The translations under genes were made by a program, and so were the position numbers. A stretch of DNA of 64,000 nucleotides, from the IMG/VR virus record IMGVR_UViG_3300046171_000231, positions 62,001 to 126,000 of that record, one strand, 5' to 3'. The notes under the pieces are model-generated. The model did no database searches. It was not told the DNA's origin and worked only from the letters and a program-made list of their open reading frames with translations. Of this stretch, positions 9,123 through 31,718 are shown one piece after another. How positions within the stretch are numbered: position 1 is the stretch's first letter; the number at the start of each line of letters is the position of its first letter.

Positions 9123-9129
9123 TATTTAT
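9123..9129 (-). promoter_or_regulatory. late promoter ATAAATA
   Basis: Immediately upstream of ATG 9117. Confidence 0.6.
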
Positions 9130-10472
9130 TAGACGACAACATAATTACCGTCAATGAAGAGATTACCATTTATAGTAACTGGACCTGCCATCAGACCATT
9201 AAATGCAGTTCCAATATAATGATTATCATTTAAAGTATTATCGTGAATTATCATTCCATTACTTATATACATTCCTTTTGCCATACCATTACTTACAGCA
9301 AAACTATTTCCCTGTCCTGTATGATGATGACACCAGTAATAAAGTAATGCAGGTGCATCAGCAGGTATCGTCCATACAACTTGACGGACTGTAGCAGCAT
9401 TAAATCCACTTACATACTGTGCCATTGTTTTATTGACACCATCTAATTTATATGTAACACCTGTAATATAATGACCGTGACTATTGTGATCACCGCCAGG
9501 TCCGAGACTGAACATCAATGGATGATTTGCACCACCATATACTTCATTACTATTATCAGACTGGTCAAAGGTATAGGTATGACGTTTATTAATTTCAAAC
9601 AATGCAGGTTTCTCAACTCCATCTAAGTAAAATACTCCTGTTGATTGACCTCCAACTGTATCTGTTCCGACTGTGACAGTGATTGTTGTGTCGATAGATG
9701 ATGCACCGATACCTTGCAAATCATTATCATCAAGACTACTCGTATGAACACCAATTGATTTATTGGTTGCGATACCAGCAGTGTATGTACTCCAAGTTCC
9801 ACCAGCACCAGCTCCACCACCACCTGCAATACTAATATCTACTGTGGTTCCATTGACTGCAAATGTATTACCAGTTCCTACAAAATTAAGTTGAGTAATA
9901 CCAGCACCAATCTGAGTTCCTGCAGATTGAATACCAACTTCAGAAGCACCACTGAATAATGTTGCTGTTGCAACTCCAGCAATACTTACATTATCAAGAT
10001 TAGTATGTCCATCTACATCTAATTCTACAAAGTCACCATCACCTTTAAATGTTGTGGCAGTGATAACACCTGCATTTCCTAATTTTATATTACTTCCTAC
10101 ATCTAAAAAGTCATCTACATCTACACCTGACCTTGCTGTGATGATACCAAGTGAATCAACATTCTTTACATCTTCATATGTTAAGACTCCACCAACAGTA
10201 ACATTACCTGAAAAGTTTGCAGTAGATCCAGATATTGCCCCAGTAAAAGACGAAACACCAGCAACGGTCATTCCTGCATTTATATCAACAGCGTATGTGT
10301 TGAATGTTGCAGCAGTTCCAGTAATTATATTATCTGTGGACGCTATACCAGTAAGCCCAGCACCATCACCTACAAAGGATACTGCAGTAATAATACCTGT
10401 AGATTTTATATTATGACTGTTTATATTGGATGCGGTATGAATACCTGGACCAAGTATCCGTGTAAATGCCAT
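9129..10472 (-). CDS. tail fibre with cupredoxin-like insert and C-terminal adaptor motif
   Basis: Fibre repeats, HPLMF...YYWCHHHTGQG, NGLMAGPVTI...GNYVVV. Confidence 0.7.
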   Translation of the reverse strand: MAFTRILGPGIHTASNINSHNIKSTGIITAVSFVGDGAGLTGIASTDNIITGTAATFNTYAVDINAGMTVAGVSSFTGAISGSTANFSGNVTVGGVLTYEDVKNVDSLGIITARSGVDVDDFLDVGSNIKLGNAGVITATTFKGDGDFVELDVDGHTNLDNVSIAGVATATLFSGASEVGIQSAGTQIGAGITQLNFVGTGNTFAVNGTTVDISIAGGGGAGAGGTWSTYTAGIATNKSIGVHTSSLDDNDLQGIGASSIDTTITVTVGTDTVGGQSTGVFYLDGVEKPALFEINKRHTYTFDQSDNSNEVYGGANHPLMFSLGPGGDHNSHGHYITGVTYKLDGVNKTMAQYVSGFNAATVRQVVWTIPADAPALLYYWCHHHTGQGNSFAVSNGMAKGMYISNGMIIHDNTLNDNHYIGTAFNGLMAGPVTINGNLFIDGNYVVV

Positions 10473-10493
10473 TATTGCTTTTTAGTTATTTAT
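10473..10493 (-). promoter_or_regulatory. late promoter/cassette junction ATAAATAACTAAAAAG
   Basis: Near-identical to 4621..4640. It contains the upstream stop codon. Confidence 0.7.
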
Positions 10494-10846
10494 GATGGTT
10501 TAGGGTATTTTGCTTTTACAGGATCGACTATATCGGTCTTCCACTTGTCTATACCGTGGTGATAGATATAGTCAAGTTGCTCAGCTAATGGAGGATAGAT
10601 ACCTTCTGTAGTAGCAACACCGTCTACCATCTGACCTGTTCTTTGTTCTTTATAAAGTTCTTGATTTTTAATTCTTGTTACTTCTGCTAATACCTGTTCT
10701 TTTGTTGGAATTTTACTTTCGTCAGATAAGTTACCATCACCAATTAACCATTTAACATTTTCATATTCATCATCCCCCTCCACATAAAAGAAAAGTCCAC
10801 CACAAAGGTTTTCACATGCTTGTAAAAAAGTGCTTGTTCCGTTCAT
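10490..10846 (-). CDS. tail fibre chaperone-like protein
   Basis: YPPLAEQLDYIYH...VKAKYPKPS motif, also in 13224..13583. ATGA overlap at 10843-10846. Confidence 0.65.
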   Translation of the reverse strand: MNGTSTFLQACENLCGGLFFYVEGDDEYENVKWLIGDGNLSDESKIPTKEQVLAEVTRIKNQELYKEQRTGQMVDGVATTEGIYPPLAEQLDYIYHHGIDKWKTDIVDPVKAKYPKPS

Positions 10847-11364
10847 AAATTCATCTCCCAAATTGATAAACTTGATCCACCCATACTGTTTTCAATTCTT
10901 TGATCATCACTAGCATTAGGATTTAATATATTAAAAGGTCTGTCACTATTTCCGTTTGCAGTTCTATGACCTACTAATACATTTGTACTTCCAGTTCCTG
11001 TTGCATTTGTTACACTGCCAGATATTACCATCATCTTATAATAACTAACATCAGTATATTGATAATGAACAATTGGATAACCACTTCCTACACCACCACT
11101 TGTAACGAGGCTACCATTATATGTTCCTCCCACTTTAAGATTCATAGTAATCGCACCAGCATTATTACCCCAACAAGCAATAAATCCTTGAAATACTAGT
11201 GTGGAAGAAGATAATTTTTTATCAAAACTACCAAAATCACAAGTAACAATTTCATTATTACTAGCGGAATTGGTGAGACTCCTTCGAGTAGTATTTTTTA
11301 ATCTTGTATAGTGAACTACATGAGCAGCTCTATGTTGTCCTTCATCACTAAAATAAAGACTCAT
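10843..11364 (-). CDS. fibre tip/adhesin-like protein
   Basis: Beta-rich 173 aa ending SSLSIWEM. Translationally coupled to the upstream fibre (TAATG). Confidence 0.55.
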   Translation of the reverse strand: MSLYFSDEGQHRAAHVVHYTRLKNTTRRSLTNSASNNEIVTCDFGSFDKKLSSSTLVFQGFIACWGNNAGAITMNLKVGGTYNGSLVTSGGVGSGYPIVHYQYTDVSYYKMMVISGSVTNATGTGSTNVLVGHRTANGNSDRPFNILNPNASDDQRIENSMGGSSLSIWEMNL

Positions 11365-13205
11365 TATAAAACCTCCTCCATCTTGATTTTGAATTTTTTA
11401 CCACTTCGATTATTTATCATATACACATCACTTTCACCCTCTTGTATTGTCCAGTCACCCCAAGTATTATCTATACTATTTGTTGAACCTTCATTAGATA
11501 AGTTAAGGTCATTTGTGTATATGTTTCTCCAACGCATTGAAGAAGTACCTAAGTCATAAGTATTATTAGCTACTGGTGCCCAATGCCCATCACTTTGTAA
11601 TTGACATCTAACTGTATTATTAGTGGCAGAATTTTAATTGACTAGCAACTGTATTATTAATGTAAGCATTACTTCCGTCATAATACATTTGTAACTGGTT
11701 TGCTGAACCAGACATAAATCTGGCAGTGTTATCACCAAAGTTAATATTATTCCCTGCTGTTAATAGCTCCATGTTACTTGCACTCCATAACTTAGTGTTT
11801 CAAGCTTTTTACTTCCATTGAAATATAACTCAACGGCCCCGTCACCTATTAATTTTATCCCGTTGTCCGAACCTTGTGGTCGTATGTAAATATCATTTCC
11901 AGAATTGATATACATATCAACACCAGAACCGTTATCTATAACTAGATTTCCAGTATCGTTTTCTAGGTATGAATTAGATCCGTTATGAAATATTCTTAAA
12001 TCTCCACCAGATTTATTACCAATAGTAACACCATTTGAATTACCATCTGGAAAAGAAGCTTTACCTGTTGATATAAGATTACCTTGAACTTCTAATTGAC
12101 CATTGCTTTTAAGTTTTAACTTATCTACATAACTTCCAGAAATATTACTTTTGAATGTTAAATCATTCTCATCTTGTTCAGATTGTATTTTCCAACCATC
12201 TCCATTATCATCACCTTGGTCGGCAATTAAATTTAATGACGCAGGAGTTGCTTCACCAGCTCTAACAAATAAATTTGAACCATTCCATTGTAGTTCCGAC
12301 TCACCTTGCAATTCGTTAGCTGTTCCAGTTCCAGTAATAATATAATTATTTGTATTGCTGTTTATTGTTGTACTTGTTACTGCTGCAAAGGTTGAGTCAC
12401 CTCTCAAGAATGTAGATGAACTTGCAGTTCCAGATCCTAATCTTGCGGTGGGAACTGTTCCTGATGCTAAATCAGATGCATCAAGGTTTGTTAGATTAGC
12501 ACCACTGATTGCAGGTAAAGCACCTGAAAGTTTTGACGCAGTTAATGTAGATATTCTAGCATCAGCAACTGTACCAGTTAGTTGACCAGCAGGTAAACTC
12601 GTTAGGTTTGCTCCTGAACCAGTAAAAGAAGTTGCGGTAACAACACCTGCATTTCCCAATTTAATATTACTACCAACCTCTGCACCTGAACTAAAAGTAT
12701 GAATACCAGTGTACATTGCACCCGATGCCTGTGCTTGTATCTTTACATTACCACCAGAATCTTTAATGGCAGTTGCATCAATACCAGTTAAGGCAGCACC
12801 ACTACCTACAAAACTTGTTGCTGTTATGACACCAGCATTACCTAATTTTATATTACTTCCTACATCTAAAAAGTCATCAACATCGAGTGCTGGTGCAGTG
12901 ATTATACCAACTGAATCTATATTAGTTACATCTTCATATGTTAATGTACCAGCGATTGAAACATTACCTGAAAAAGTTCCATCAACTGCAGTAACATTTC
13001 CTGAAAAAGATCCACCAGTTGCAGTTATAATACCTGTAGATTTGATATTATGAGCTTCAATTAGATTAGAATGGATTGTTGTTACACCAATATTAAATGA
13101 TGTAGCAGTGGTAGTGATACCAGTAAAATCGGCATTATTACCCACCCAGTTGGTGTCTGTCGCAACACCAGGTCCAGTTATCTTTGTGAGTCTACTTAAT
13201 ACCAT
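11364..13205 (-). CDS. tail fibre protein (three 1-nt insertions between ~11630 and ~11775)
   Basis: After correction ORF 11760..13205 continues into NTYDLGTSSMRWRNIYTNDLNLSNEG...WGDWTIQEGE...INNRSGKKFKIKMEEVL*, a common marine-phage fibre C-terminal domain. Confidence 0.75.
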
Positions 13206-13227
13206 TTATATTTTTTTAGTTATTTAT
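13206..13227 (-). promoter_or_regulatory. late promoter/cassette junction
   Basis: ATAAATAACTAAAAAAA containing the stop codon of 13224..13583. Confidence 0.7.
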
Positions 13228-13583
13228 TGAGGAATGAATGTGTTTATACCAACCACCCAACTAGGAACTACTGTAGTAACAACTCCTACTTGTGATTTTG
13301 GATATTTTGCCTTGATTTCTGCAATCTTATCTTTCCAAGTTGTTGTTCCATTCACTGCATCCCAATACTGCATATCCTGTTGTTCTTCTAAACTTGGATA
13401 CTCTGCAGCACGAGCATCAGAGTAATCAACTGTTGTAACCGTATCAATACCCACCACACAAGTTGTACCGATTCCTACAACATCTGCTTTGAATAGTTGA
13501 TAATCTAAATTACCTTCAGATACTGGTATGAATGCACCATCAGAAAGTCTTTTAATTGTTGTGTCGTCTAAAAATTTATACAT
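13224..13583 (-). CDS. tail fibre chaperone-like protein
   Basis: IKRLSDGAFIP...NLDYQ and RAAEYPSLEEQQDMQYWD...IKAKYPK motifs. Confidence 0.65.
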   Translation of the reverse strand: MYKFLDDTTIKRLSDGAFIPVSEGNLDYQLFKADVVGIGTTCVVGIDTVTTVDYSDARAAEYPSLEEQQDMQYWDAVNGTTTWKDKIAEIKAKYPKSQVGVVTTVVPSWVVGINTFIPQ

Positions 13584-13586
13584 TTT

Positions 13587-15713
13587 TTAAATCTCCGCAG
13601 TTGCTGTGTGTCTCCATTCATAAAATCTTTCAGTTCCACTCATGTAAGCGTTATAGCCTTGTCTACTTGCAGCAGATGCACTAAGCGATCCGGCTCCCTG
13701 AAAATTGGAAAAAGATATAGTTGGTGTATCTCTCATTTCTGTTATAAATCTTACAGGAAATTGTCTACCAGATACATTACCACTATTCCAAGACGCTCTA
13801 GTACTTATATCTTTTTGGAAATAACGTTGGCAACGTGCGAGTTCATCACCATAACTAACGTGTTCATATGGCGTGGCAGATCCTACTTCAAACTGAACGC
13901 CAGTTAGGTTCATGTAGTTATTTGTACTACTCATAAAATTGGGTTGATTGGTTGAGCAGTATTGAACAGAAGATGTGGTGTGCCAAGAATTTAAAGTAGA
14001 TGTACGCCTGTCTGATTGTATTGCTAACGCCCATTGAACTCTAAGACCACCAGCGTTCCAAGTACCAGAAGTATCGCCAGGAACAGTAATTGTTTTCTTT
14101 TCCCAAGTATTAGCAGCACTTATAGTATATTCAGCAACAAAACATCTAGTACCTTGCGTATCGTTAAATAGAGAAGCACTATAAGTTCCTGTTAAGTTAG
14201 ATTTTATCCAAAAAGATAAAGTACAACTTTTTGCATAACTCTCGCCATAATTTAAGTGTTGTATATTTTTATCTTCAATTACATGACTAACAAATGTCAA
14301 TCCATCTATTGATGAGTCTGCTGTTACACATTTTATTCTTAAAGAATATTTATAACCTTCTGGGTAGTTTTGCTGCCATTCCAGTCCAAGAATACCACCA
14401 TTACCATTATAACCTTTAAAACGATCTGTATGATAAGTATGAGTAGAACCACTAAGGTTGTTCATAGATGCTAGAGCAAATCTTTGGCAAACTTGCATAG
14501 CTCCGTTGATTATTAAATTTCTATGTGATAATTGTCCCACTGTTGGAACAAATTCAGTAGCAGTAGCAATACCAGTCACATTCATATTACCACCTGCGTC
14601 GATGCGAACTCTTTCAGTTCCACCGTTTGTTCCATTTGTAGAGAATTTGATATAATTATCACCATGATTATATGCTACTGAACCTGCTTCAGCAGTACTA
14701 TCTTTAAACATTATAACTGATGTTGCAAAATCATTACTTGTTTCTAGTATTAATTCAGAATCAGAATTAGCATTTGCTTCGGCAGCGTGAACTGTTAGTT
14801 GTGCGTCACCAGTTGCTCCACCATTAAAAGTTAAGTTTGCTTCACCAGTAATAGCAGAAGCACTAGTCGTTGTTACAACTCTATTATCTGCACCATTTGT
14901 TAATGTTGGTCCTGCACCTGTTAACCCACTACCATCTCCAACAAAACTTGTTGCAGTTATAATACCAGTTGCATTTATATTTCCTACAGGAGATATTGTA
15001 ACTGCTGCTCCTACAGTAACATTTCCTTCTGCTGATACACGAAGTTTTTCAGTTGAACCATCTTTGTTTAAGAATCTAGTTAATGTGCTTTCAATATCTA
15101 ATGAACCAGAATCGTTTGTATTTCTTAATCTTGATTTAGCACCTGATGATGTATGAATTAATATCATATCAGATGCATCACCAAATACTAAATTTTGATC
15201 ATCGAGAAAATTTTGACCGTGACTTAAATTTCCAAATAAAGTTGATTTTGCAACAGCTTCTAAAGTATTTGCGGTATTAGAACCCATAATAACTTTATTT
15301 GCTGCATTATTGTTTATTGTTGTTCCCGAAATTGTTGACCAAGACGCTGCACTTCCTGAACCACCACTTGTTAATACTTGTCCTGATGTTCCATAGTTTG
15401 CACCACCGATTCCTAACTGTCCACCATTTCCTACTCTAAATTTTTCACTACCACTTATCTGTAGAAGTAAATGAGATGTTGAGTTTACATTACCAGTAAC
15501 ATTTCCAATTAAAGTTGTTGCAGTTATAATACCAGCGTTACCAAGTTGTATTGTACTTCCTACGTCTATATGATTTGCAGTGTGTTTTGTTGTTACATCA
15601 AATTGTGTAGCGGTCATCACACCTACTACATTAAATCCTGATATTGAATCTAATACACCATCAGATGCTAATATCTTATCGTTATTATTCTGTCCACTGA
15701 TGGTTATTGCCAT
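13587..15713 (-). CDS. tail fibre with C-terminal carbohydrate-binding-like domain
   Basis: GANYGTSGQVLTSGGSG repeat, RNLIINGAMQVCQR...TGVQFEVG...ELARCQRYF. Confidence 0.75.
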   Translation of the reverse strand: MAITISGQNNNDKILASDGVLDSISGFNVVGVMTATQFDVTTKHTANHIDVGSTIQLGNAGIITATTLIGNVTGNVNSTSHLLLQISGSEKFRVGNGGQLGIGGANYGTSGQVLTSGGSGSAASWSTISGTTINNNAANKVIMGSNTANTLEAVAKSTLFGNLSHGQNFLDDQNLVFGDASDMILIHTSSGAKSRLRNTNDSGSLDIESTLTRFLNKDGSTEKLRVSAEGNVTVGAAVTISPVGNINATGIITATSFVGDGSGLTGAGPTLTNGADNRVVTTTSASAITGEANLTFNGGATGDAQLTVHAAEANANSDSELILETSNDFATSVIMFKDSTAEAGSVAYNHGDNYIKFSTNGTNGGTERVRIDAGGNMNVTGIATATEFVPTVGQLSHRNLIINGAMQVCQRFALASMNNLSGSTHTYHTDRFKGYNGNGGILGLEWQQNYPEGYKYSLRIKCVTADSSIDGLTFVSHVIEDKNIQHLNYGESYAKSCTLSFWIKSNLTGTYSASLFNDTQGTRCFVAEYTISAANTWEKKTITVPGDTSGTWNAGGLRVQWALAIQSDRRTSTLNSWHTTSSVQYCSTNQPNFMSSTNNYMNLTGVQFEVGSATPYEHVSYGDELARCQRYFQKDISTRASWNSGNVSGRQFPVRFITEMRDTPTISFSNFQGAGSLSASAASRQGYNAYMSGTERFYEWRHTATAEI

Positions 15714-15738
15714 TTACACAATTTTTTAGTTATTTATA
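15714..15738 (-). promoter_or_regulatory. late promoter/cassette junction
   Basis: TATAAATAACTAAAAAA containing the stop codon of 15734..16228. Confidence 0.75.
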
Positions 15739-16228
15739 TTTTAATTCCACCAAAATTTCCAATACCTCTATCATATAAAAAGATAACAGTATATCTTGGT
15801 TTGACCACTGGTTCGACCCAATGTAATAAATCAGTCGGATATTCTTTAGCCCAACCTGCTACATTCTTAGAGAATCCACCTTCATAACTTAAACCCTCTT
15901 CAGAATCTTCAAGATGTAATGTAGTAAAGTATGCAGGTCCGTGGTCATCACAATGTTTTGGAATCCAGTCACCTACATCATACTTATTAATTACTATTTT
16001 TGATAAAGGTAATGGTTTCTTCGGAGAAATCTTTACTAAATCAACAAGTAAATCTTTTGGTAATGATGTATCACCTACACATTGATAAGATCCAATCTCG
16101 TGATTCTCTACTCCTCGAATAGGTCTGAATGTTGAACGATCAAGATAGTAAGCATCATCTAATAAATCTAATCTATCTCTTAATGAATGTGCTTCTTCTA
16201 CTTCAATTAGTTTATATTCATGCACCAT
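15734..16228 (-). CDS. 2OG-Fe(II) oxygenase
   Basis: INKYDVGDWIPKHCD (HxD)...LLHWVEPV...RYTVIF. Confidence 0.75.
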   Translation of the reverse strand: MVHEYKLIEVEEAHSLRDRLDLLDDAYYLDRSTFRPIRGVENHEIGSYQCVGDTSLPKDLLVDLVKISPKKPLPLSKIVINKYDVGDWIPKHCDDHGPAYFTTLHLEDSEEGLSYEGGFSKNVAGWAKEYPTDLLHWVEPVVKPRYTVIFLYDRGIGNFGGIKI

Positions 16229-16736
16229 AAGTTGCTAACTTCCAAGTCGGAACCATATTAACATTCCATAAATTATCCTGAGTGCTAGTCTCTGTTTCAT
16301 AAGTATATGTTCCATCAAACAATAAAGCATCTCCTTTATCTACATTATATTTTGTACCATTTAATATTAGATGATTGCCATCATTCAATGAAATTGAAAG
16401 AAAAGATCCAATCGCCCTGACTGGTTCATTCAAACCAATCTTTGCTGGATCACTTGGTGTGGTTGGATATAAGATACCAGTGTTTGCAGGTATTTTCATA
16501 AAGGTTGAAACTAGGTATGAACTCAAAACTTCACTTGTGATATAAGTTTTCCAAGCTGTCTTAAGTGATTCGGGATATGAATAATATCTTAAAATTTTAT
16601 ATGAAGAAACTTGATTACCACCTGCATCACTATTACGATATTCCTTTCCAGCAGCATCTGGTAGTGTTGGTAATGCTGCCACCATAGCGTCACAATTATT
16701 TGTAGTAAGATAACCTGTGCGTTTAATTATTGTCAT
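16218..16736 (-). CDS. degenerate double-stranded beta-helix (oxygenase-like) protein
   Basis: FMKIPANTGILY...SISLNDG...YNVDKGDALLFDG. Metal-binding His residues are not evident. Confidence 0.4.
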   Translation of the reverse strand: MTIIKRTGYLTTNNCDAMVAALPTLPDAAGKEYRNSDAGGNQVSSYKILRYYSYPESLKTAWKTYITSEVLSSYLVSTFMKIPANTGILYPTTPSDPAKIGLNEPVRAIGSFLSISLNDGNHLILNGTKYNVDKGDALLFDGTYTYETETSTQDNLWNVNMVPTWKLATYGA

Positions 16737-16737
16737 T

Positions 16738-17319
16738 TTACCTATCTGAAATCATATTAATACCAGAAAGATCATTTTCTGATTTAATCTCTTCGGAGAC
16801 TCCACCTGCCATTTTAGCATTTACATCATTTCTTACTGTGGTTTTATCTTTATATGTCCAGTTTGGATCATTTTGATAAGAATCTTTATACTTACCATTC
16901 AAATCTCTTACTTCATCAATATATTCTTTCATCGCATTGAAACTTGCTTTTTGATCGTCAGTTAAAGATGAAGCATCTAATAATAATTTCATCATATCAA
17001 TAACGTGATTCAACTGATGATGATAATTATATTTCTTACGAATATGAATTCCTGCAGTGGTATCAAGATCAAGTTCAGATGCTATTCTTGGTCTAGTTGC
17101 TTTGTTTTGCACTGAACCTGAATCAAAATCACCAACATATTCATGTGTTTCAGGATTAAATGTCTCTAACTTACCTTTACAATACTTGGTATTCACTTTA
17201 TCAAGATGTGAACCAATCATTTTTGCCACAAGAGCACCTGACAACTTATTAAAAATAAGTGTCTGAGGTTGTTCTATATTTTCCTCTTTAAGTAAATCGT
17301 CGAATTGTTGTGGATACAT
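16738..17319 (-). CDS. hypothetical protein, possibly a fibre chaperone
   Basis: 193-aa ORF with GAGGAG RBS, directly downstream of a fibre gene. Confidence 0.5.
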   Translation of the reverse strand: MYPQQFDDLLKEENIEQPQTLIFNKLSGALVAKMIGSHLDKVNTKYCKGKLETFNPETHEYVGDFDSGSVQNKATRPRIASELDLDTTAGIHIRKKYNYHHQLNHVIDMMKLLLDASSLTDDQKASFNAMKEYIDEVRDLNGKYKDSYQNDPNWTYKDKTTVRNDVNAKMAGGVSEEIKSENDLSGINMISDR

Positions 17320-17336
17320 TTTAACTCCTCTTCATA

Positions 17337-19734: not shown

Positions 19735-19735
19735 C

Positions 19736-20062
19736 TTATGTAATCTCCATTATAGTAAGAGTTGCATCTACACTATTATTTGTATCACTATCGACTGTTA
19801 TAGTATCTGCTGTTTCTAATACTACCTTATTTCCTGACATAAATTCAAGAGATGATCCTTGAGGTATTGGAGCATTTTTTAATAATTTAACATCGTCAGT
19901 TGATGGTCTTGTAATTCCAACTCCTACAAGACAACCTGAACCAGAAGTATTTGCAAGTGTGATACCAATTACAACAGTTGTAGTTGCACTCGGAACAACA
20001 TAAACATTTTGAGTTGTAATACCAACGTTCGCTTTTGTTTTTAATTTAAAGGTATTTGCCAT
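19736..20062 (-). CDS. conserved virion structural protein
   Basis: MANTFKLKTK...VYVVPSATTTVVIG...KVVLETAD...IMEIT family, usually next to an ALAIALG protein. Confidence 0.6.
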   Translation of the reverse strand: MANTFKLKTKANVGITTQNVYVVPSATTTVVIGITLANTSGSGCLVGVGITRPSTDDVKLLKNAPIPQGSSLEFMSGNKVVLETADTITVDSDTNNSVDATLTIMEIT

Positions 20063-20069
20063 TTTGTTA

Positions 20070-20297
20070 TTATCCTAGTGCGATTGCAAGTGCTGTAGCA
20101 TCAGCTAGTGTTGCAGCAGGATTACCATTTGTATTTATGGTGCCTGTAATATTAGCATCTCCCTGAACATACAATGCATAATTTCCTTGAGGTGCTGTCG
20201 TATTAATTCCAACAGAGTTTGCAATACCAACCTGTGCAGTTGTATCGTTTACATTTACTAACGAATTAAATTGTGATGCTTCTCTGTTCTTAGCCAT
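20070..20297 (-). CDS. small structural protein
   Basis: VGINTTAP fibre motif, C-terminal DATALAIALG. Confidence 0.6.
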   Translation of the reverse strand: MAKNREASQFNSLVNVNDTTAQVGIANSVGINTTAPQGNYALYVQGDANITGTINTNGNPAATLADATALAIALG

Positions 20298-20317
20298 ATT
20301 TCTTTTTAGTTATTTAT
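20298..20317 (-). promoter_or_regulatory. late promoter/cassette junction
   Basis: ATAAATAACTAAAAAG upstream of ATG 20297. Confidence 0.7.
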
Positions 20318-21898
20318 TAACTTGTACAGTATGCAGTCCAACTAAAACGACCCGTATCAAATCCTGTTCCATATGGAAAGAATCTTATTGTTGTTAAAGC
20401 ATTTCCACCTAAATCAGGAACACCCATTACAAACATATTTCCACTTTGTGTTCGTCTGTTTGCCATTCCATGAAATATCCACATATTAGAAGCTGAAGAT
20501 GATGAAAATGTCATAAAAATTTCACCTGTATCACTACCTGCATTTAAGTTAGTATCAAAAGCATCTATCTGATTTTTACTTCCTTCATAAGCATTACCTG
20601 TTCCACTTTTTGTATAATTATAATTACCACTTGCAAGAATCCCTGCGGAAGTTCCTAATCTGAAAGCAGGAGAACCAGATCCACTTGTAGAAATATTATG
20701 CCCAACAAAATCAACTTTGTAACAGTTCGCAGGAAGAGTAAAATCGTAACTCCCACCTCCTGATAGAGGACCAGCATTTGTTGTTCGATGAACTAATACT
20801 CCATTTGTTGAAGTTGTAACACCAACGTTCATTTCATTACCACCCGCACCTCTTAAATAGATGTTTCCAACCATATTACTATGGAGAGTACATATGTAAT
20901 ATAATTGTGCAGGTGCATCTAGTTCTGGAGTAAAGAACTGAACTCCATTTTGATCACCAGTAACACCAGCGGTATATGCGGAACCACCAGTTGTCAAACG
21001 GAACTGAAATGGGTGTGCTGAACCAGTAGTATTATTAAAACGATATTTCTGCCCTCGAATCAAATATAAATCTGGATCATCTGCAGAAGCTATCTACACC
21101 TCCACCACTAAATCTATATGCTGACGAACCATTTGCAGTCACAGTAAAATTAACGACTGGTGCCTTCATCAGGGTGCTGGTATATTAGTTAAGCTTGCAC
21201 CACTGATTGCTGGTAATGCACCTGAAAGTTTTCGATGCAGTAAGTGTTGAAATTCTTGCGTCAGCAACAGTTCCTGATGCAATATTTGATCCATTAAGAT
21301 TGGTAAGATTAGCACCACTGATTGCTGGCAATGCACCAGATAATTTAGATGCAGTAAGTGTAGATATTCTTGCATCGGCAACTGTGCCAGTAAGTTGACC
21401 AGCGGGTAAACTGGTTAAGTTTGCACCACCTCCACTAAATGAACCTGCGGTAAACAAGTTTGTATTTGGATTGTAAGTTAGTCCTGTATCAGTTTCTGCT
21501 CCTTGAGATCCAGAAGCACCGTCTGAGAATAATGGATATACAGTTTCGTTCGCAGTATTATTTGCAGTTACAGTAATGTTTGTTGCAGTTGTAGCAGTAC
21601 CTGTGATTCCACCTGCAGCTGATATTGCACCTGCAAAGAATGAAGTTCCTCCAGTTACACTTAACCCACTTCTCGCTGTTACAACACCTACTGAATCTAT
21701 ATTAGTTACGTCTTCATATGTTAATGTTCCACCAACAGAAACATTTCCAGTCACAGAAAGAGTTCCACCAATGCTGACGTTTGTACTTATCGCAACATTG
21801 TTGGCATTTAAATTTAAATTGTTAGGACTTGTAATCGTCGGTGTGCCTGAAGCACCAATCAGATTAACCTCCTTTACACCAAAACCCTTCTCTGCCAT
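20317..21898 (-). CDS. tail fibre with cupredoxin-like domain (about four 1-nt insertions between ~21090 and ~21235)
   Basis: ORFs 21185..21898, 21169..21381 and 20317..21063 join through ...IPAPDEG...FTVTANGSSAYRF...DPDLYLIRGQKY. HPF...YYICTLHSNM motif. Confidence 0.7.
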
Positions 21899-21918
21899 AT
21901 GACTTTTTGATTATTTAT
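21899..21918 (-). promoter_or_regulatory. late promoter/cassette junction
   Basis: ATAAATAATCAAAAAG containing the subtilase stop codon. Confidence 0.7.
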
Positions 21919-23825
21919 GATTGTTTGAATGATATACCAGTGACTTCAACACCAGAAATTTTCACTTCGGCATCTGATGCAGTCGGATCATAGATGACAC
22001 GATTCGCTGCACCACGATTATTATAAGCCTCTCTCCAGTATTCATTATCATTATCAGTTGGATATGGATTTGCCCATTCCGTATTTGGAAGCATTTGTGA
22101 TGCTTGCGTTTTAATAAAATCTTTCACCTCTGCTGACGTTGCACTTGGTTTTGATTCAAGAAATAATGCAACGACTCCAGCAACAACTGGAGATGCTGCT
22201 GATGTCCCATTAAAATATCGATCAACAAAACTAGAATTATATCTTGAAAAATTAACTTCCGTTCCCAGTTGATCACCATTCGCTGCTCTCATACCAGCAG
22301 ACAATGTTTCATCTGCAGGTGCCCATACATCAACACCTGGTCCGTTATTAGAATAAGATGCCTTTCTTTCTTGATAATTAGATTCAATATAATCATCCAT
22401 AGCTCCAACACAAACTGCTGGATGATAGTCTGTAGTTGTATTGTATCCAATATTTGCAGGATGAATCCAATTACGATGACCTGATGGTACAGTTCCACTT
22501 ACTCCTGAACCAGGTATACCTGCTCGATTGTCAGCACCATTCAAAGTTGTGAGATAATCATTTAAATGAGGATCACTTAAACCAAGACCTAATCTTTGGT
22601 TACTATTTCCAGCAGAAGTAACGTATATTACACCTGCATTTACCATTTCATCACCTGCTGTTTCAGTTGAATTTGATCTTGACGATGTTGCAAACTGACG
22701 ATTATAAGTTGTACCTGATCTCAATCCATATGCCATACCTTGAACACCTGAACTACCCATATTATAACCAGTGAAATTACCTGTTGAACCTTTAAAACTA
22801 TAATAAACTTGAGTTCCTGAATTAAAACCAGCAAAGTATCCCCAACTTCCATTTACAACTGTAGGATTTTTACGACCCGCAGTAACAGGTTTATTTTGAT
22901 GAAAGATTTTCATAATATCGTAACTTGCTTCAATACCCATACTTGTAGGAGATGCAATCGCACTCATATTCCATATATTAGATTCAAAAGCAAGACCAAA
23001 ATTTTTACCAGCAGACAGTCCAGCACATCCAGTACCGTGAGAACTTGTCATTGTATGTGATGTACCACCAATACCAAGTGTATTTGCAACAGTATAATTA
23101 TCAGGAATTGCAACAGTACCGACTGAAGAAAATGAACCTGAACGACTGCTTGAATTTTCCCACCAAGCGTGTGCTGATGCAGTTGTAATACCTGTTCGAC
23201 CATCAGGTTTTGTATATGTGTGACTATTTGATGTGAAGTAACTTGGATCAATATAATATGGACCGTCTAGAACTACATCTCTCACTCTTGACTTACCATC
23301 ATCATCTAAAAATTCAGGATGATATTGCATAATACCTGAGTCTTGTATAACAACATCAACATTTTTACCAGTCAAACTAAAACTTAAATCATCATTAATG
23401 ACTGCTGCATCACCAGTAACATTTGGCCAACTCTTTCCATTTGTTGTTACACCAACTCTCTTCGTTGCCCAGTTTGTACGATTTTCCTCTGCTGATGTTG
23501 CTGATATAGAAAAAGCAGAAGTTGATAAGTTACGATATATTTTTACGTTCTTACGAAATCTTTTTGTATCAGGTTCTGGTTCTGGATATGAAAAACGATA
23601 ATCAGATGGAGATAATTCTATCCACTTGACTTGAGGGTGAGTCGATATTCCAGTTGCTTCATCGTGTGTTAACCAATAAGTACCACGAGTTGGACTATGT
23701 TCTTTTGTATCAGAGCAAGTTACCTTACGGTCAGGAATACCATCTTCATTTGAATCAACTATTAATACGTTGTGAATTGTATTCCAATACTCAGGACTTG
23801 TAACAGCAAGAGTATATTTGAACAT
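21915..23825 (-). CDS. subtilisin-like S8 serine protease
   Basis: Catalytic motifs VVIQDSG, HGTGCAG, SAGN and FNGTSAASPVVAG. Confidence 0.9.
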   Translation of the reverse strand: MFKYTLAVTSPEYWNTIHNVLIVDSNEDGIPDRKVTCSDTKEHSPTRGTYWLTHDEATGISTHPQVKWIELSPSDYRFSYPEPEPDTKRFRKNVKIYRNLSTSAFSISATSAEENRTNWATKRVGVTTNGKSWPNVTGDAAVINDDLSFSLTGKNVDVVIQDSGIMQYHPEFLDDDGKSRVRDVVLDGPYYIDPSYFTSNSHTYTKPDGRTGITTASAHAWWENSSSRSGSFSSVGTVAIPDNYTVANTLGIGGTSHTMTSSHGTGCAGLSAGKNFGLAFESNIWNMSAIASPTSMGIEASYDIMKIFHQNKPVTAGRKNPTVVNGSWGYFAGFNSGTQVYYSFKGSTGNFTGYNMGSSGVQGMAYGLRSGTTYNRQFATSSRSNSTETAGDEMVNAGVIYVTSAGNSNQRLGLGLSDPHLNDYLTTLNGADNRAGIPGSGVSGTVPSGHRNWIHPANIGYNTTTDYHPAVCVGAMDDYIESNYQERKASYSNNGPGVDVWAPADETLSAGMRAANGDQLGTEVNFSRYNSSFVDRYFNGTSAASPVVAGVVALFLESKPSATSAEVKDFIKTQASQMLPNTEWANPYPTDNDNEYWREAYNNRGAANRVIYDPTASDAEVKISGVEVTGISFKQS

Positions 23826-26800
23826 TACATAACCTCACGTTTTATCTTATAGGTTGTAGAACCAGAAACTCCAGTTTCAGGAGTTGCTCTCAATAATATA
23901 TTACCACTACTGATTGTTGCATCACATTGAACTAATAATGATGAACTAAACATCACTGCAAACTGTGTTGAGTGAATTGTTGTGCCATCTCTCATTGCTA
24001 GTAGTTTTTGTGATTGGAAATCACTTCCATTCTTAATGTATATTGTATACTCAACAACTAAATCATTTGCACTATATCCAGTGCAGTGTATTAATGGTTG
24101 CAGGAGTTCCAGCACTTGCATTGAACGTTCCTGAAAGATTAGTTGTAATACCAACATCAGTTCCAGCTGATATAGTTGTCCAAGATGCTGCAGCTCCAGA
24201 ACCACCACTGGTTAATACTTGACCTGATGTACCATAGTTTTCACCTAGTAATCCAATATCACCATCTTTACCAATACGGAATCTTTCAATAGTAGATCCA
24301 CCTTGCATTGTCCTGAAGATATGATCACTATATGAAGTTCCCCCAGAATAATATGCAGTATCACCACCACCTCCACCTGAATATTATTTTAGATGAACCA
24401 TATATTGCATTACTATTAAATACAACTCCACCAGCACCAACTGATAATTGATAAGTAGTTGTTATGCCAGATACATTTAGTTTTTGAACATTAAACTGAC
24501 TTGTTGATACACCAACAGTTACTGAACCACCAGATATTGCAGATACATCTATTATCTCTCCAAAGTTTATTGTCCCTGCAGTTCCAACTGTGTTACCATT
24601 ATTTTTAATTACAACACCAGAACCTGATGCGGTAATACCTGTTAATCCTGAACCATCACCAATAATCGCACCACCAACATAAAGGTTCTTCGCAACACCA
24701 ACACCACCATCTACAACTAATGCACCAGTAGTTGTGCTTGATGATTGTGTCTCACTATTCAATTCAAGACTTGTTGCAGTGACAATACCTGTACCACCAA
24801 ACAAAGCGTTACCAGTAACACCAAATGTTGCACCTACACCTATATTAGCTTGTGGATTTCCAATCTCAAATCTTCCATTATGTGTTCTTGCTACCTTTGT
24901 ACCATCACTGTATAGGATAACACAATCTGCTGTAGTTTCAAATCTCTCACTTGTGTAAGGACCACCTGTAATAAAGAATGAACTTGTATTACCTACACCA
25001 ATTGTTAAGTCTCCAGCAGTGCTTTTAATACGAGTTGGATGCGTATCGAATACCACTTCACCAGAAAAAGTAGTAACACCAGCAATAGAAACATTATCAA
25101 GATTAGTATGTCCGTCTACGTCAATATCAGCATTGACATCTACGTTTCCATTAAATGTTGAGATACCAGATACATCTAGTTTGTTTACATTGAATTGACT
25201 TGTATTAACTCCAGCAGATATACCAGTAAGTTGTGAACCATCACCAGTATAAGCTGTAGCAGCAACTGTTCCCGTTACTGTCACACCCGTGTTTGAAGTT
25301 TCTAATTTTTTAGCATTATTAAAGTTGAGTTCAACACTTCCACCGTTTGTAAATTTAGCAAGTGTGGTTCCACCACCATTACTCTTAATACTTACAACAC
25401 CACCACCACTTGCGTTAATATCAGCAATAGTCAACGCACCTGATGCAGATATCGCTGCAGTATTCACAGTGCCAGCAAATGTTGTCACACCAGCGACATT
25501 GACATTATCTAAGTTTGTATGACCGTCAACATCTATCTCAACAAAATCACCATTACCTTTGAATGTTAAAGCAGTTACAATACCAATACTACCAAGTTGA
25601 ATATTACTTCCAACCTCTATGAAATCATCAACATCTATATTTGTAAGTGTAGATACACCTGTAACGACTAAAGTATTCGCACGAGTTTCAGCTGTTGAAC
25701 CTCCACCAGCAGATCCAGTTATTGTTACAATACCAGCCGATATAGGTGATACAGATAAATTATCACCAAAGTTAATTGTTCCAGCAGTACCAACAGTCGA
25801 ATTACTATCCTTTATGACTACACCTGAACCTTCAGCAATAATACCAGTTAATGCTGAACCATCTCCTTTAAATTGTGTCGCAGTAACAACACCAGAAATA
25901 TTTGCACCACCTGTTCCTGTGATAAATTTATTGAATAAATCTAAATTACCACCAAGTTGGGGTGATAAATCTTCGACAAGATTTCCAATACCATAAGCAC
26001 CACCACCAGCAGACACAGTATTGTATGAAACGATTTCGACTATATCTCCTACAAATGAACCGACTGCTAATACAACAGATGTACCATTAGTTGCAGTAAA
26101 TTCAGCATCAGTTAATTTAACACCATTGATATAGACATCAACATAGTTTACATTGTATGAGAAACTAAATGAAGTTTGTCCAGCAGATGCTGTAAATGTT
26201 TGTCTAGTTCTTATTGATGGGAATGATGCCCACTCAACTCCAGTTCCAGTTGTCTTTAAATAATTTCCATTTGTTCCAGCAGATCCACCAGCGGTTATCG
26301 TGCTATTGAATCTTGTGTTTGCAGCAAAGGTAGTGACTCCTGCAACAGAAACATTATCTAAGTTTGTATGTCCGTCTACATCTAATTCTACAAAGTCACC
26401 ATCACCTACAAATGTATTACCATGAAAATTAGTTCCAGTAACAACACCAGCGATAGAAACGTTATCTAAGTTTGTATGACCATCTACATTTAAGTCTTGA
26501 GTAACAGTTGCAAAACCAGATATGCTAACATTGTCAAGATTAGTATGACCATCTACATCTATATCACCATTTAAATCTATTCCTGTAGCAACTATTGATG
26601 CAGTATTTACTGTTCCAGAAAAAGTTGTAACACCAGCAACACTAAGATTATCTAAGTTAGTATGTCCATCTACATCTAAATCTCCATTTAAATCTATGCC
26701 TGTGGCAGTTACACTAGTGGCAGTTAAAATACCAATATTATAAACTTCAGTTCCTAATCCTGTGACACCAAATTTATTCTTATTAACTAATTCAAGATAT

Positions 26801-28176
26801 GCACCATCACTTAATGAGAAACTATTTCCCTGTCCTGTGTGATGATGACACCAGTAATATAAAGTTGCGGGTGCGTTTGCAGGTACTTTCCATTCGACTG
26901 TTCGTGACGTAGCAGCCACAAAACCACTGACATATTCAGCCATGGTTTTGGCAACACCATCTAACTTATAAGTGATGCCTGTCATATAATGACCGTGACC
27001 GTTATGATCACCACCTGCACCAGTACTGAACATTAATGGATGTGCACCAGCACCACCATAAGAAGCGTTAGTTGAATTTGATTGGTCGAAGATATAAGTT
27101 GTATTTCTGATTATAGGAAATAGAGGTGGTTTCTCTGTACCATTAAAATAGAATACACCAGTTGATTGTCCACCTACTGTATCAGTTCCGACTGTAACAG
27201 TAACCGTGGCACCCATATTATGTGAGAAATATGCCTTACCGTTTGCGTGTACGTGAGCAAATAATCCGTGATAATCAGTTGAATTCGGAAGATCTGTAAT
27301 ATCAGAATATAAAGATGGTACTTTGTTCTGACCTGATAGTGCTTCTATTACACCACCAGTAACTCTCATACCTGAACCAGCAGTTACAATTCCAACAGCA
27401 GAAACACCAGCACCAACGTGAATATCTTTATTTGCAGTTATAATACCAACAGAATCAATATTTGATACATCCTCATAAGTTAATGTGCCAGCAATTGAAA
27501 CATTACCATTAAATATTGCATCTCCTGTGAATGTAGAAATACCACCTACACTTAAATTTCTCTCTACAAATAAATCTTTATATGAAAATGTAGAGATACC
27601 AGATGTTGGTGCACCAGTCTGTCCAATATATCTGTAACCTACAATGTATATGTTTGTATCAGTAACACCACTGGGAACACTTGTGTCATTAAAGTTTAGA
27701 ACACCAGCAGAATAATCAAAGAACCAACCATCGTTTGCACCTGAACCAGCAGCAGATAATGCAACACCACCAGAATTTGGATCTCCTTTATATACTTTAA
27801 TTAAATAACTTGCACCAAATTGAGTATCAATCCAGTTCGTTAATCTTGTAGATGATGCATTACCATAAGTTGTATAAGCAATATAAGCACGTTGACCAGA
27901 ACTTGTAGCATCTGCTGTCATTCTTAACCCAGAGCTACCAGCAAGATATACCTTAACTTGATTCGTGTCTGAACCTGGTGGTGTTGCAGGAATTGAACTA
28001 CTCTCATTCCATAGTGCACCATTTGCAATAATCAGAGGTGATGGTATCGCTTCAGCGAAGGGTTGCTTTCCAGTACCACTTATTGCACCAGTTCCCACGA
28101 CAGAACCTGTCTTGGTTTTGGTAAAACCAATTTTCTTTAACAGAAAGTCAATCTTTTGTTGGTCGGTTACTGCCAC
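23825..28176 (-). CDS. very large fibre/structural protein, ~1450 aa (insertions at ~24385 and ~24083)
   Basis: ORFs 24361..28176, 24072..24308 and 23825..24208 join. Six DVDGHTNLDN repeats, cupredoxin-like insert, Ig-like FTASAGQTSF domain. Confidence 0.75.
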
Positions 28177-31660: not shown

Positions 31661-31674
31661 TAATTTTTCCTATG

Positions 31675-31698
31675 AAAAAGGGGTCTTGCGACCCCTTG
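31675..31698 (-). terminator. intrinsic terminator/stem-loop between psbA and psbD
   Basis: AAGGGGTC-GCAA-GACCCCTTTTT. Confidence 0.8.
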
Positions 31699-31718
31699 AG
31701 TTGTTTTGGGTTAAGTAA

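What the first reader, a model, noticed from the sequence alone, without database searches (positions are those of the whole stretch)
9300..27200. Type-1 copper (cupredoxin-like) sites in three fibre proteins, two with a Gln axial ligand
Seen: HPF...YYICTLHSNM (H...C-x2-H-x2-M) at ~20860-21060. HPLMF...YYWCHHHTGQG (C-x2-H-x2-Q) with an extra DHN.HGHY His-rich loop at ~9300-9680 and ~26820-27200. Established: H/C/H/M is the blue-copper ligand set, Gln replaces Met in stellacyanins, and Prochlorococcus is copper sensitive. Inference: the virion may display copper- or redox-active domains, for metal-mediated receptor recognition or protection from oxidation.
Basis: partly seen in the sequence, partly recalled or inferred. 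Interest (0 to 1): 0.62.

Follow-up and report, generated by a model that had tools for sequence, protein, structure and literature searches.

The report
Blue-copper-type domains in cyanophage tail proteins
Three tail-fibre or baseplate proteins of this T4-like marine cyanophage each carry a domain that looks like a small blue-copper protein with all four copper-binding residues, which is unexpected for a virus particle and can be tested directly at the bench.

Summary
The 235.8-kb virus has T4-type Gp23 and psbA/psbD-like genes. It holds exactly three copies of one domain, all in tail or baseplate ORFs of the window. Two are a long type with C-H-x-H-T-G-Q. One is a short type with C-T-L-H-S-N-M.

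AlphaFold models are confident (pLDDT 93 and 92). Every top match in two independent PDB fold searches is a cupredoxin, with best Z 9.9. A profile of short-type copies alone hits amicyanin, plastocyanin and copper nitrite reductase at E 5e-6 to 2e-4. It places the family's His, Cys, His and Met on amicyanin's MPH and C-T-P-H-P-F-M motifs, its four copper ligands.

Among 493 distinct domain copies, 88% keep H/C/H plus Met or Gln. Cys and the second His are mostly lost together.

The family is very large: 8,755 representative proteins. Among isolates it matched only Synechococcus and Prochlorococcus phages, of more than one tail type.

The frame breaks in the third gene are errors of this record. 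Copper binding, ligand geometry and function remain untested. Most likely these are metal-loaded cupredoxin modules exposed on the tail. A redox role is possible. No held paper or annotation describes this.

The parts
9129..10472 (-). P0001, a 447-aa tail-fibre or baseplate protein: fibre-like N-terminal part, long-type cupredoxin domain (aa 256-400), short C-terminal tail
   Evidence: ORF. PHROG tail fiber families and baseplate wedge phrog_708 over aa 256-415. Near-identical 438-458-aa proteins occur in many metagenomes.
9273..9707 (-). Long-type cupredoxin domain of P0001, with an insertion after strand 4 and axial Gln
   Evidence: AlphaFold pLDDT 93.2. All top fold matches are cupredoxins: Foldseek probability 0.99-1.00, VIA Z 8.8 to 6tfd_A 26-141.
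9522..9524 (-). His317 (domain His62, motif H-P-L), predicted N-terminal copper ligand
   Evidence: Invariant column in alignment A1. Lies just before strand E64-67 in the model.
9312..9332 (-). Ligand loop C381-H-H-H384-T-G-Q387: Cys, second His and axial Gln, plus the invariant His382 directly after the Cys
   Evidence: The loop lies between strands E121-126 and E134-139.
9471..9473 (-).
   Evidence: 42 of 42 long-type sequences below 80% identity keep it. Its geometry was not testable.
24361..28176 (-). P0003, a 1271-aa fibre protein with repeated DVDGHTNLDN motifs and one long-type cupredoxin domain (aa 318-462)
26791..27225 (-). Long-type cupredoxin domain of P0003. Ligand codons: His379 at 27040-27042, Cys443 at 26848-26850, His446 at 26839-26841, Gln449 at 26830-26832
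   Evidence: 69% identical to the P0001 copy. HMM E 2.3e-82. Coordinates.
20317..21910 (-). Fibre or baseplate gene with a short-type cupredoxin domain. Read in three frame segments in this record; a single 529-aa ORF in the near-identical contig L065
   Evidence: phrog_677 'baseplate wedge tail fiber protein connector' matches the cupredoxin part only.
20836..21172 (-). Short-type cupredoxin domain (H-P-F ... C-T-L-H-S-N-M). Ligand codons: His at 21013-21015, Cys at 20890-20892, His at 20881-20883, Met at 20872-20874
   Evidence: The intact copy L065:1905-2243 was modelled at pLDDT 92.1. Z 9.9, rmsd 2.6 Å, 95 residues aligned, 24% identity to 6tfd_A 26-139. Foldseek matches are rusticyanin, plastocyanin and amicyanin.
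21087..21233 (-). Three sites with extra bases (+1 near 21229-21233, +2 near 21163-21172, +1 near 21087-21091) that break the frame in this record only
   Evidence: DNA alignment with L065 and L066. Every contig of 4 runs from 4 studies leaves these bases out (table 4).

Best explanation
The three segments are true cupredoxin domains, the fold of blue-copper proteins such as amicyanin and plastocyanin. They are built as modules into tail-fibre and baseplate proteins of a T4-like marine cyanophage.

Each domain keeps a complete type-1 copper ligand set. One His sits at the start of strand 4. A Cys ends strand 7. A second His and an axial Met (short type) or Gln (long type) follow in the strand 7-8 loop, with the shortest known spacing, C-x2-H-x2-M/Q, as in amicyanin.

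Shown here: the fold, the homology, the ligand positions, their conservation, and the tail-protein context.

Inferred: each domain binds one metal ion, most likely copper. The metal ties the C-terminal loop to strand 4 and makes a small rigid beta-sandwich knob that projects from the fibre or baseplate. There it most likely serves as an exposed contact or adhesion module during adsorption to marine picocyanobacteria. Whether the metal also cycles between Cu(I) and Cu(II) is open.
For: - Models: pLDDT 93.2 and 92.1.
- Fold: all 50 listed rows of two exhaustive PDB comparisons are cupredoxin-fold proteins. Best is the N-terminal type-1 copper domain of Hyphomicrobium nitrite reductase, Z 9.9 and 8.8. 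Foldseek agrees.
- Sequence: the short-type profile hits 2vmj (E 5.3e-6), amicyanin (5e-5) and plastocyanin (2.4e-4). His, Cys, His and Met align on amicyanin's MPH and C-T-P-H-P-F-M motifs.
- Pfam: relatives pass the PF00127 Copper-bind cut-off. One JGI record names a member 'plastocyanin'.
- Conservation: 432 of 493 distinct domains (88%) have H/C/H plus M or Q. 440 keep both Cys and the second His, 39 lose both, and only 14 lose one. Of the 440, 432 keep Met or Gln.
- Short and long types are homologous, with Met aligned on Gln.
- Precedent: engineered amicyanin M98Q, which has the same C-x2-H-x2-Q spacing, is a solved Cu(II) protein and appears among the matches.
- Context: PHROG tail and baseplate families. 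321 isolate records match, all Synechococcus or Prochlorococcus phages, mostly annotated gp9 'baseplate wedge tail fiber connector'. BFVD matches to cyanophage tail proteins reach TM 0.85-0.89. Syn19, P-SSM2, Bellamy and P-GSP1 keep the motif.
Against: - No metal was measured, and I could not read model coordinates, so ligand clustering is inferred from topology and alignment only.
- The window's own proteins get no Pfam hit, even at E up to 1.
- Z scores of 7-10 are middling on their own. The argument rests on the uniformity of the hit list plus the sequence evidence.
- From general knowledge: cupredoxins normally fold and load copper outside the cytoplasm, whereas virion proteins assemble in the cytoplasm where free copper is scarce. 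Recombinant cupredoxins often pick up zinc.
- About 12% of family members lack the site and presumably still fold, so the fold does not strictly need the metal.
- The adhesion role is only inferred. In two of the three proteins the domain is internal, not at the distal tip.
Confidence: 0.7

Rival explanations
1. The copper centres are redox-active and that is their function. The virion carries electron-transfer sites that react with oxidants or reductants at or near the host surface, for example to condition adsorption or tail triggering, or to deal with reactive oxygen.
For: The axial ligand contributes little to metal affinity but tunes the reduction potential (general knowledge of type-1 sites). 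It is kept in 432 of 440 H-C-H sites, and it is fixed as Met in one subfamily and Gln in the other. The family is spread across myo-, podo- and other tailed phages of photosynthetic hosts. Light-dependent adsorption of some cyanophages is unexplained, and changes in tail fibres have been suggested as a cause (10.1101/167650).
Against: No electron donor or acceptor is known or predicted. Type-1 sites change shape very little on redox, so they make poor switches. P-GSP1 and P-SSM2 carry the domain yet adsorb in the dark, so presence of the domain does not predict light-dependent adsorption. There are no experimental data.
Confidence: 0.2
2. The site is a relic or a zinc/structural site. The residues are conserved for folding, the domain carries no copper in natural virions, and it acts simply as an Ig-like spacer or adhesin.
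For: Assembly is cytoplasmic. About 12% of copies have lost the ligands. There are degenerate paralogous copies such as L022:3778-4206 in the same proteins. Cupredoxin-like folds without copper are common among the fold matches (SufI, EfeO, coagulation factors, CyoA).
Against: 88% retention of all four residues across a family of thousands, the all-or-none pattern of loss, and retention of the weakly binding axial ligand are hard to explain without a bound metal of type-1 geometry.
Confidence: 0.15
3. Chance resemblance: short H...C-x2-H-x2-M/Q strings in glycine- and threonine-rich fibre sequence, with no real relation to cupredoxins.
For: No Pfam hit for the window's proteins. Single-sequence searches of the PDB found nothing.
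Against: Profile E-values reach 5e-6 against true blue-copper proteins with the ligands aligned. The models are confident and the fold hit lists are uniformly cupredoxin. Relatives pass PF00127.
Confidence: 0.01

Closest known systems
Amicyanin (Paracoccus; PDB 1aac and mutants)
   Same: Single-domain cupredoxin. Same ligand order and the same minimal loop C-x2-H-x2-M. The profile aligns His, Cys, His and Met on amicyanin's MPH and C-T-P-H-P-F-M motifs at E 5e-5 to 2e-4. Fold matches. The M98Q mutant mimics the long type's C-x2-H-x2-Q.
   Different: Amicyanin is a free periplasmic electron carrier with a defined partner (methylamine dehydrogenase). Here the domain is an internal module of 447-1271-aa virion fibre proteins. 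The His ligand is followed by Pro, not Asn. Identity is only about 15-20%.
N-terminal type-1 copper cupredoxin domain of Hyphomicrobium denitrificans nitrite reductase (PDB 6tfd, 2dv6)
   Same: Best structural match to both models (Z 9.9 and 8.8, rmsd 2.6-2.9 Å, up to 24% identity). Also a profile hit at E 1e-4. It too is a cupredoxin fused as an extra module to a larger protein.
   Different: There it feeds electrons to a catalytic nitrite reductase core. No catalytic partner domain is present in the phage proteins.
Stellacyanin and umecyanin (phytocyanins with axial Gln)
   Same: Gln replaces Met as the axial ligand. Umecyanin 1x9r is among the fold matches (Z 5.5).
   Different: By general knowledge the loop spacing differs (C-x4-H-x4-Q against C-x2-H-x2-Q here). 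Phytocyanins have a disulfide next to the site, while the phage domains hold a single Cys. They are plant cell-wall glycoproteins.
Cyanophage 'gp9 baseplate wedge tail fiber connector' (phrog_677; e.g. Syn19_089) and P-SSM2 orf298 'T4-like proximal tail fiber'
   Same: These carry the same domain. It forms the C-terminal ~110 aa of Syn19 gp9 and aa ~59-163 of P-SSM2 PCMG_00298, with H...C-x2-H-x2-M intact.
   Different: The annotations name them only by T4 analogy, and none mentions copper or cupredoxin. This genome has no PF07880 (gp9/10 N-terminal) match (though the control genomes were silent too). Its carriers have other architectures.
Multicopper oxidases and copper nitrite reductases (type-1 site wired through Cys-His to a second copper site)
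   Same: Cupredoxin fold. The His ligand is followed by Pro, as in the H-P-x-H-x-H motif seen in the 6vox alignment. The long type has an invariant His directly after the Cys.
   Different: There is a single domain, no H-x-H or H-C-H motifs, and no His before the Cys. A second site is only a conjecture.

Membership tests
Cupredoxin / type-1 (blue) copper protein (Pfam PF00127 clan) | Greek-key beta-sandwich of 7-8 strands | tested here: met
   Models at pLDDT 93.2 and 92.1 have 8-9 strands. All 50 listed rows of two exhaustive fold comparisons are cupredoxins, Z up to 9.9. Foldseek probability 0.99-1.00.
Cupredoxin / type-1 (blue) copper protein (Pfam PF00127 clan) | Ligands in the canonical places: His at strand 4, Cys at the end of strand 7, His and Met/Gln in the strand 7-8 loop | tested here: met
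   In the model's secondary structure His62 lies before E64-67, Cys126 ends E121-126, and His129 and Gln132 lie before E134-139. The HMM alignment places them on amicyanin's MPH and C-T-P-H-P-F-M motifs.
Cupredoxin / type-1 (blue) copper protein (Pfam PF00127 clan) | Significant sequence similarity to known members | tested here: met
   Profile A3 against the PDB: E 5.3e-6 (2vmj), 5e-5 (amicyanin), 2.4e-4 (plastocyanin). Relatives P0123 and P0126 pass the PF00127 cut-off. The window's own proteins get no Pfam hit, and profile A1 alone gives only E 0.04-0.06.
Cupredoxin / type-1 (blue) copper protein (Pfam PF00127 clan) | The four ligand atoms lie within bonding distance of one point in 3D | not testable with these tools
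   Model coordinates are not exposed to the script box. Proximity is inferred from topology only.
Cupredoxin / type-1 (blue) copper protein (Pfam PF00127 clan) | Binds copper with an intense ~600-nm band and a small parallel hyperfine splitting in EPR | not testable with these tools
   Needs a bench experiment.
Stellacyanin / phytocyanin | Axial Gln together with phytocyanin loop spacing and a disulfide beside the site | tested here: not met
   Axial Gln is present. The spacing is C-x2-H-x2-Q and each domain has only one Cys. The resemblance is an analogous axial ligand, not membership.
Multicopper oxidase / copper nitrite reductase | H-x-H, H-x-x-H-x-H and H-C-H motifs across two or more cupredoxin domains that form a second copper site | tested here: not met
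   There is a single domain, and Trp or Gln/Ile precedes the Cys. Only a C-H pair plus an invariant His79 are found in the long type.
T4 gp9/gp10 baseplate proteins (PF07880) | gp9/10 N-terminal domain | tested here: inconclusive
   No PF07880 match in the whole genome, but the control genomes were silent too. The phrog_677 match covers only the cupredoxin part. Relatives P0095-P0097 and P0103 combine PF07880 with this domain.

The most novel reading that the evidence does not exclude
The tail of marine cyanophages carries working redox centres. The short type would be a plain blue-copper site. The long type would be a blue-copper site with axial Gln, wired through the adjacent Cys-His pair to a second metal site built from the invariant His79, His127 and perhaps Asp89, Met65 and Met95 of the long-type insertion. 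That would make a minimal oxidoreductase or redox sensor on the virion, acting at the host surface during adsorption or tail triggering.
Probability: 0.1. Interest if true: 0.88.

Novelty: new variant of a known kind. Interest (0 to 1): 0.62.

Why it matters
Type-1 copper sites are known as electron-transfer centres of cellular proteins. I found no report of one as a conserved part of a phage tail.

This one appears to be standard equipment of marine picocyanobacterial phages. It matched 321 isolate genomes, among them a T7-like podovirus and a phage of the separate genus Llyrvirus. It belongs to a family of more than 8,000 representative metagenomic proteins.

If the site is loaded with copper, abundant ocean viruses would bind a scarce and toxic trace metal. 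That would open a new line on how they recognise or respond to their hosts.

It also gives a function-relevant annotation to genes now labelled only 'hypothetical' or 'gp9 connector'. The test is cheap: the purified domain should be blue.

Tried and rejected
- Pfam on the three window proteins found nothing relevant, even at E up to 1.
- Single-sequence phmmer against the PDB found nothing. Only profiles reached the cupredoxins.
- Megablast of the region against isolate phages found essentially nothing.
- PF00127 over the whole genome gave no match, so this phage has no recognisable plastocyanin gene and the domains are too divergent for that model.
- PF07880 over the genome gave no match, and the controls were silent.
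Whether cellular genomes hold this subfamily therefore stays open. One cluster member is labelled as from a Euryarchaeota MAG.
- Real pseudogene for the third gene: rejected. All public contigs in four studies lack the frame-breaking bases.
- Link to light-dependent adsorption: considered and downgraded. P-GSP1 and P-SSM2 have the domain but adsorb in the dark.
- The weak PDB hit to the phiTE tail protein 9cuy (E 0.46) was judged noise.
- Literature searches on cupredoxin, blue copper or copper with cyanophage, tail fiber or baseplate found no description of this.


Full report
**What is in the sequence**

The window is bases 62,001-126,000 of a 235,761-bp IMG/VR virus record rated complete. 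The genome encodes a T4-type major capsid protein (PF07068, E 2.7e-152) and psbA/psbD-like reaction-centre genes. GC content is about 0.32-0.39. It is a T4-like cyanomyovirus.

Between 6.8 and 30 kb all long ORFs lie on the minus strand. Most match PHROG tail-fibre, baseplate or virion-structural families.

- P0001 (9129-10472, 447 aa) carries H-P-L...C-H-H-H-T-G-Q.
- P0003 (24361-28176, 1271 aa) carries the same motifs.
- The gene at 20317-21910 carries H-P-F...C-T-L-H-S-N-M.

A six-frame scan of the whole genome for [YFW][YFW]xCxxHxx[MQ] finds only these three places. An HMM of the domain finds no further copy.

**The third gene is not really broken**

In this record the gene at 20317-21910 is read in three frame segments. 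Aligned with the near-identical contig L065 and with L066, the window has extra bases at three sites (+1, +2, +1). In L065 the gene is a single 529-aa ORF.

I laid Logan contigs from four runs of four different studies on the stretch. At each of the three sites, the depth of contigs that leave the extra bases out adds up to the whole depth (table 4). The breaks therefore belong to this assembly, not to the virus population. The psbA- and psbD-like genes are also split over two frames each, which fits an indel-prone record. I did not check those two genes with reads.

**The domain family**

Word-based and pattern searches returned many close relatives in marine metagenomes and viral contigs. 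Across the viral loci the domain comes in two forms.
- The short type is about 105-115 aa and ends in C-x2-H-x2-M.
- The long type is about 135-140 aa. It has a roughly 30-residue insertion after strand 4 and ends in C-H-x-H-T-G/N-Q.

A profile made from short-type copies only recognises the window's long-type copy. The hhalign probability is 96.3% and E is 1.5e-9, with His on His, Cys on Cys, His on His and Met on Gln.

A profile of 38 copies, run against 1.84 billion representative proteins, found 8,755 proteins at E ≤ 1e-3 and 4,614 at E ≤ 1e-10. Many have 2-10 tandem copies.

**Fold**

AlphaFold2 with these alignments gave confident models:
- Long type (window:9273-9707, minus strand): pLDDT 93.2, pTM 0.88.
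- Short type (L065:1905-2243, the intact twin of the window's copy): pLDDT 92.1, pTM 0.85.

Foldseek against the PDB returned almost only copper proteins of the cupredoxin fold.
- For the long type: multicopper oxidases and AcoP, E about 7e-4, probability 0.99-1.00.
- For the short type: Hyphomicrobium nitrite reductase, rusticyanin, plastocyanin, amicyanin and AcoP, E from 1.7e-5.

The exhaustive VIA-align comparison with 48,161 chains does not depend on Foldseek. It gave 50 of 50 listed rows with the cupredoxin fold for both models. The best row was the N-terminal type-1 copper domain of Hyphomicrobium nitrite reductase (6tfd_A 26-139). For the short type that match is Z 9.9, rmsd 2.6 Å, 95 residues aligned and 24% identity. 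For the long type it is Z 8.8.

The Z values alone are middling. The uniformity of the hit lists is what carries weight.

**Sequence link and ligand alignment**

Single sequences found nothing in the PDB. The mixed profile gave only borderline hits, although the best three were a copper oxidase and two plastocyanins.

The short-type profile A3 gave significant hits:
- 2vmj copper nitrite reductase, E 5.3e-6
- Nitrosopumilus nitrite reductase with a C-terminal cupredoxin, E 8.2e-6
- amicyanin, E 5e-5 to 2e-4
- 6tfd and 2dv6, E 1e-4
- plastocyanins, from E 2.4e-4

In the printed alignment the family's H-P lies on amicyanin's M-P-H-N-V-H, and C-t-a-H-s-n-M lies on C-T-P-H-P-F-M. By general knowledge these hold His53, Cys92, His95 and Met98, the four copper ligands of amicyanin.

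In the models' secondary structure the residues sit where a cupredoxin has them. His62 comes just before strand 64-67. Cys126 is the last residue of strand 121-126. His129 and Gln132 lie in the loop before strand 134-139.

Some relatives pass Pfam's PF00127 Copper-bind cut-off. Others pass PF25489, which I did not examine further. One JGI record calls a 2,999-aa member 'plastocyanin'. The language-model atlas search placed the domain among unnamed viral clusters and one PF00127-bearing cluster.

**Conservation of the site**

In 319 domains from the 149 best representatives, conservation at the four positions is as follows:

| Position | Residue kept |
|---|---|
| First His | 94% |
| Cys | 89% (Ser in 8%) |
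| Second His | 89% |
| Axial | Met 83%, Gln 8% |

Among 493 distinct domains from all sources, 278 are H/C/H/M and 154 are H/C/H/Q, together 88%.

Loss is correlated. 440 domains keep both Cys and the second His, 39 lack both, and only 14 lack one. Of the 440, 432 have Met or Gln at the axial position. These counts are not corrected for relatedness.

A site whose members are kept or dropped together, including the weakly binding axial ligand, looks like a working metal site.

Met65, Asp89 and Met95 are invariant too. The other His of the loop vary. This could mark a second metal site next to the first. Without coordinates I could not test it.

**Where the domain occurs**

tblastn of the short type against 50,697 isolate phage records matched 321 records. 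All are Synechococcus or Prochlorococcus phages or marine single-cell viruses. The long type matched 270 records, again all from these phages.

Most matches lie in genes annotated 'gp9, baseplate wedge tail fiber connector', 'baseplate wedge subunit', 'tail fiber' or 'structural protein'. I read five examples:
- Syn19 gp9, where the domain is the C-terminal end of the protein
- P-SSM2 PCMG_00298, aa ~59-163
- Bellamy gp29, annotated 'tail fiber'
- the T7-like podovirus P-GSP1, at the N-terminus of a 666-aa protein
- S-SKS1 (genus Llyrvirus)

The first four keep H...C-x2-H-x2-M. S-SKS1 has C-x4-H-x2-M.

The 2005 P-SSM2 paper noted that orf298 has an N-terminus similar to a gp9 homologue (PMC1079782). 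By inference, that shared piece is this domain.

BFVD predicted structures of cyanophage tail proteins match at TM 0.85-0.89. Weaker matches occur in 'beta-sandwich proteins' of metagenomic giant viruses. None of the names mentions copper.

In other phages the domain is fused to S8 peptidase, Ig-like, collagen or gp9/10 N-terminal modules.

**How it most likely works**

Shown: a cupredoxin module with a complete, conserved type-1 ligand set sits in baseplate and fibre proteins.

Inferred: each module binds one metal ion, most likely copper. The ion ties the last loop to strand 4 and gives a compact, rigid knob on the tail. Its spread across phages of several tail types that share only their hosts points to a role at the host surface or in that environment. 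Contact or adhesion during adsorption is my best guess.

A true redox role is the main rival. Conservation of the axial ligand, fixed as Met in one subfamily and Gln in the other, favours it. The lack of any known partner argues against it.

Caveats:
- Virion proteins assemble in the cytoplasm, where copper is scarce, so zinc or late loading from seawater are possible.
- About 12% of copies have lost the site.
- I considered a link to the unexplained light-dependent adsorption of some cyanophages (10.1101/167650). P-GSP1 and P-SSM2 carry the domain yet adsorb in the dark, so presence alone does not explain it.

**Comparison and novelty**

The domain works like, and by the tests available belongs to, the cupredoxin type-1 copper family. 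It is closest in loop design to amicyanin and closest in structure to the fused N-terminal domain of Hyphomicrobium nitrite reductase.

It is not a stellacyanin. The spacing differs and the domain has only one Cys. It is not a multicopper oxidase either.

Full-text searches found no paper that describes a cupredoxin or copper site in cyanophage tail or baseplate proteins. The library does not hold most subscription journals, so prior description cannot be excluded.

I rate it a new variant of a known kind. The fold and site are familiar. What is new is the unreported virion context and a long form with axial Gln and extra invariant His.

Noticed in passing
window 30691-32718 (-): The psbA- and psbD-like genes (PF00124) are each split over two overlapping frames (32026-32718 with 31821-32102; 30893-31582 with 30691-30897). 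One match has an internal TAG. These are probably further indel errors of this record, but an intron or a real break was not excluded.
   Followed up: partly
window 9471-9473 and 9327-9329 (P0001 His334, His382); 26989-26991 and 26845-26847 (P0003): The long-type domains have two more invariant His (one in 'HY', one directly after the ligand Cys), plus invariant Met65, Asp89 and Met95. This may be a second metal site beside the type-1 site. Geometry could not be tested.
   Followed up: partly
window 21915-23825 (-): A 636-aa S8 subtilase-like protein (phrog_9158, phrog_3677 protease) is encoded next to the cupredoxin gene. In other cyanophages (L072; BFVD entries of ACG-2014e and ACG-2014h) an S8 peptidase is fused to the same cupredoxin domain.
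   Followed up: partly
window 2542, 10019, 19473, 25122, 25533, 26382, 26559, 26676 (-): The ten-residue motif DVDGHTNLDN recurs eight times in several fibre ORFs, five of them in P0003. It looks like a repeated fibre-shaft unit with its own conserved His.
   Followed up: no
L022:3778-4206 and equivalents in L023, L029, L031-L033, L044: Some fibre proteins carry a further long-type-like copy in which the Cys and the loop His and Gln are replaced (for example L-F-G-Y-I-S-S-G-H). This is a degenerate paralogue that keeps the fold signature without the site.
   Followed up: partly
P0123, P0125, P0147, P0295 (representative proteins): Giant metagenomic proteins (958 to 4,678 aa) carry up to ten tandem copies of the domain. 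One cluster member is labelled as from a Euryarchaeota MAG. Whether these are viral or cellular surface proteins is unknown.
   Followed up: no
whole genome G000: No PF00127 plastocyanin-type match and no PF07880 gp9/10 N-terminal match anywhere in the 235.8-kb genome. The second search had silent controls.
   Followed up: yes
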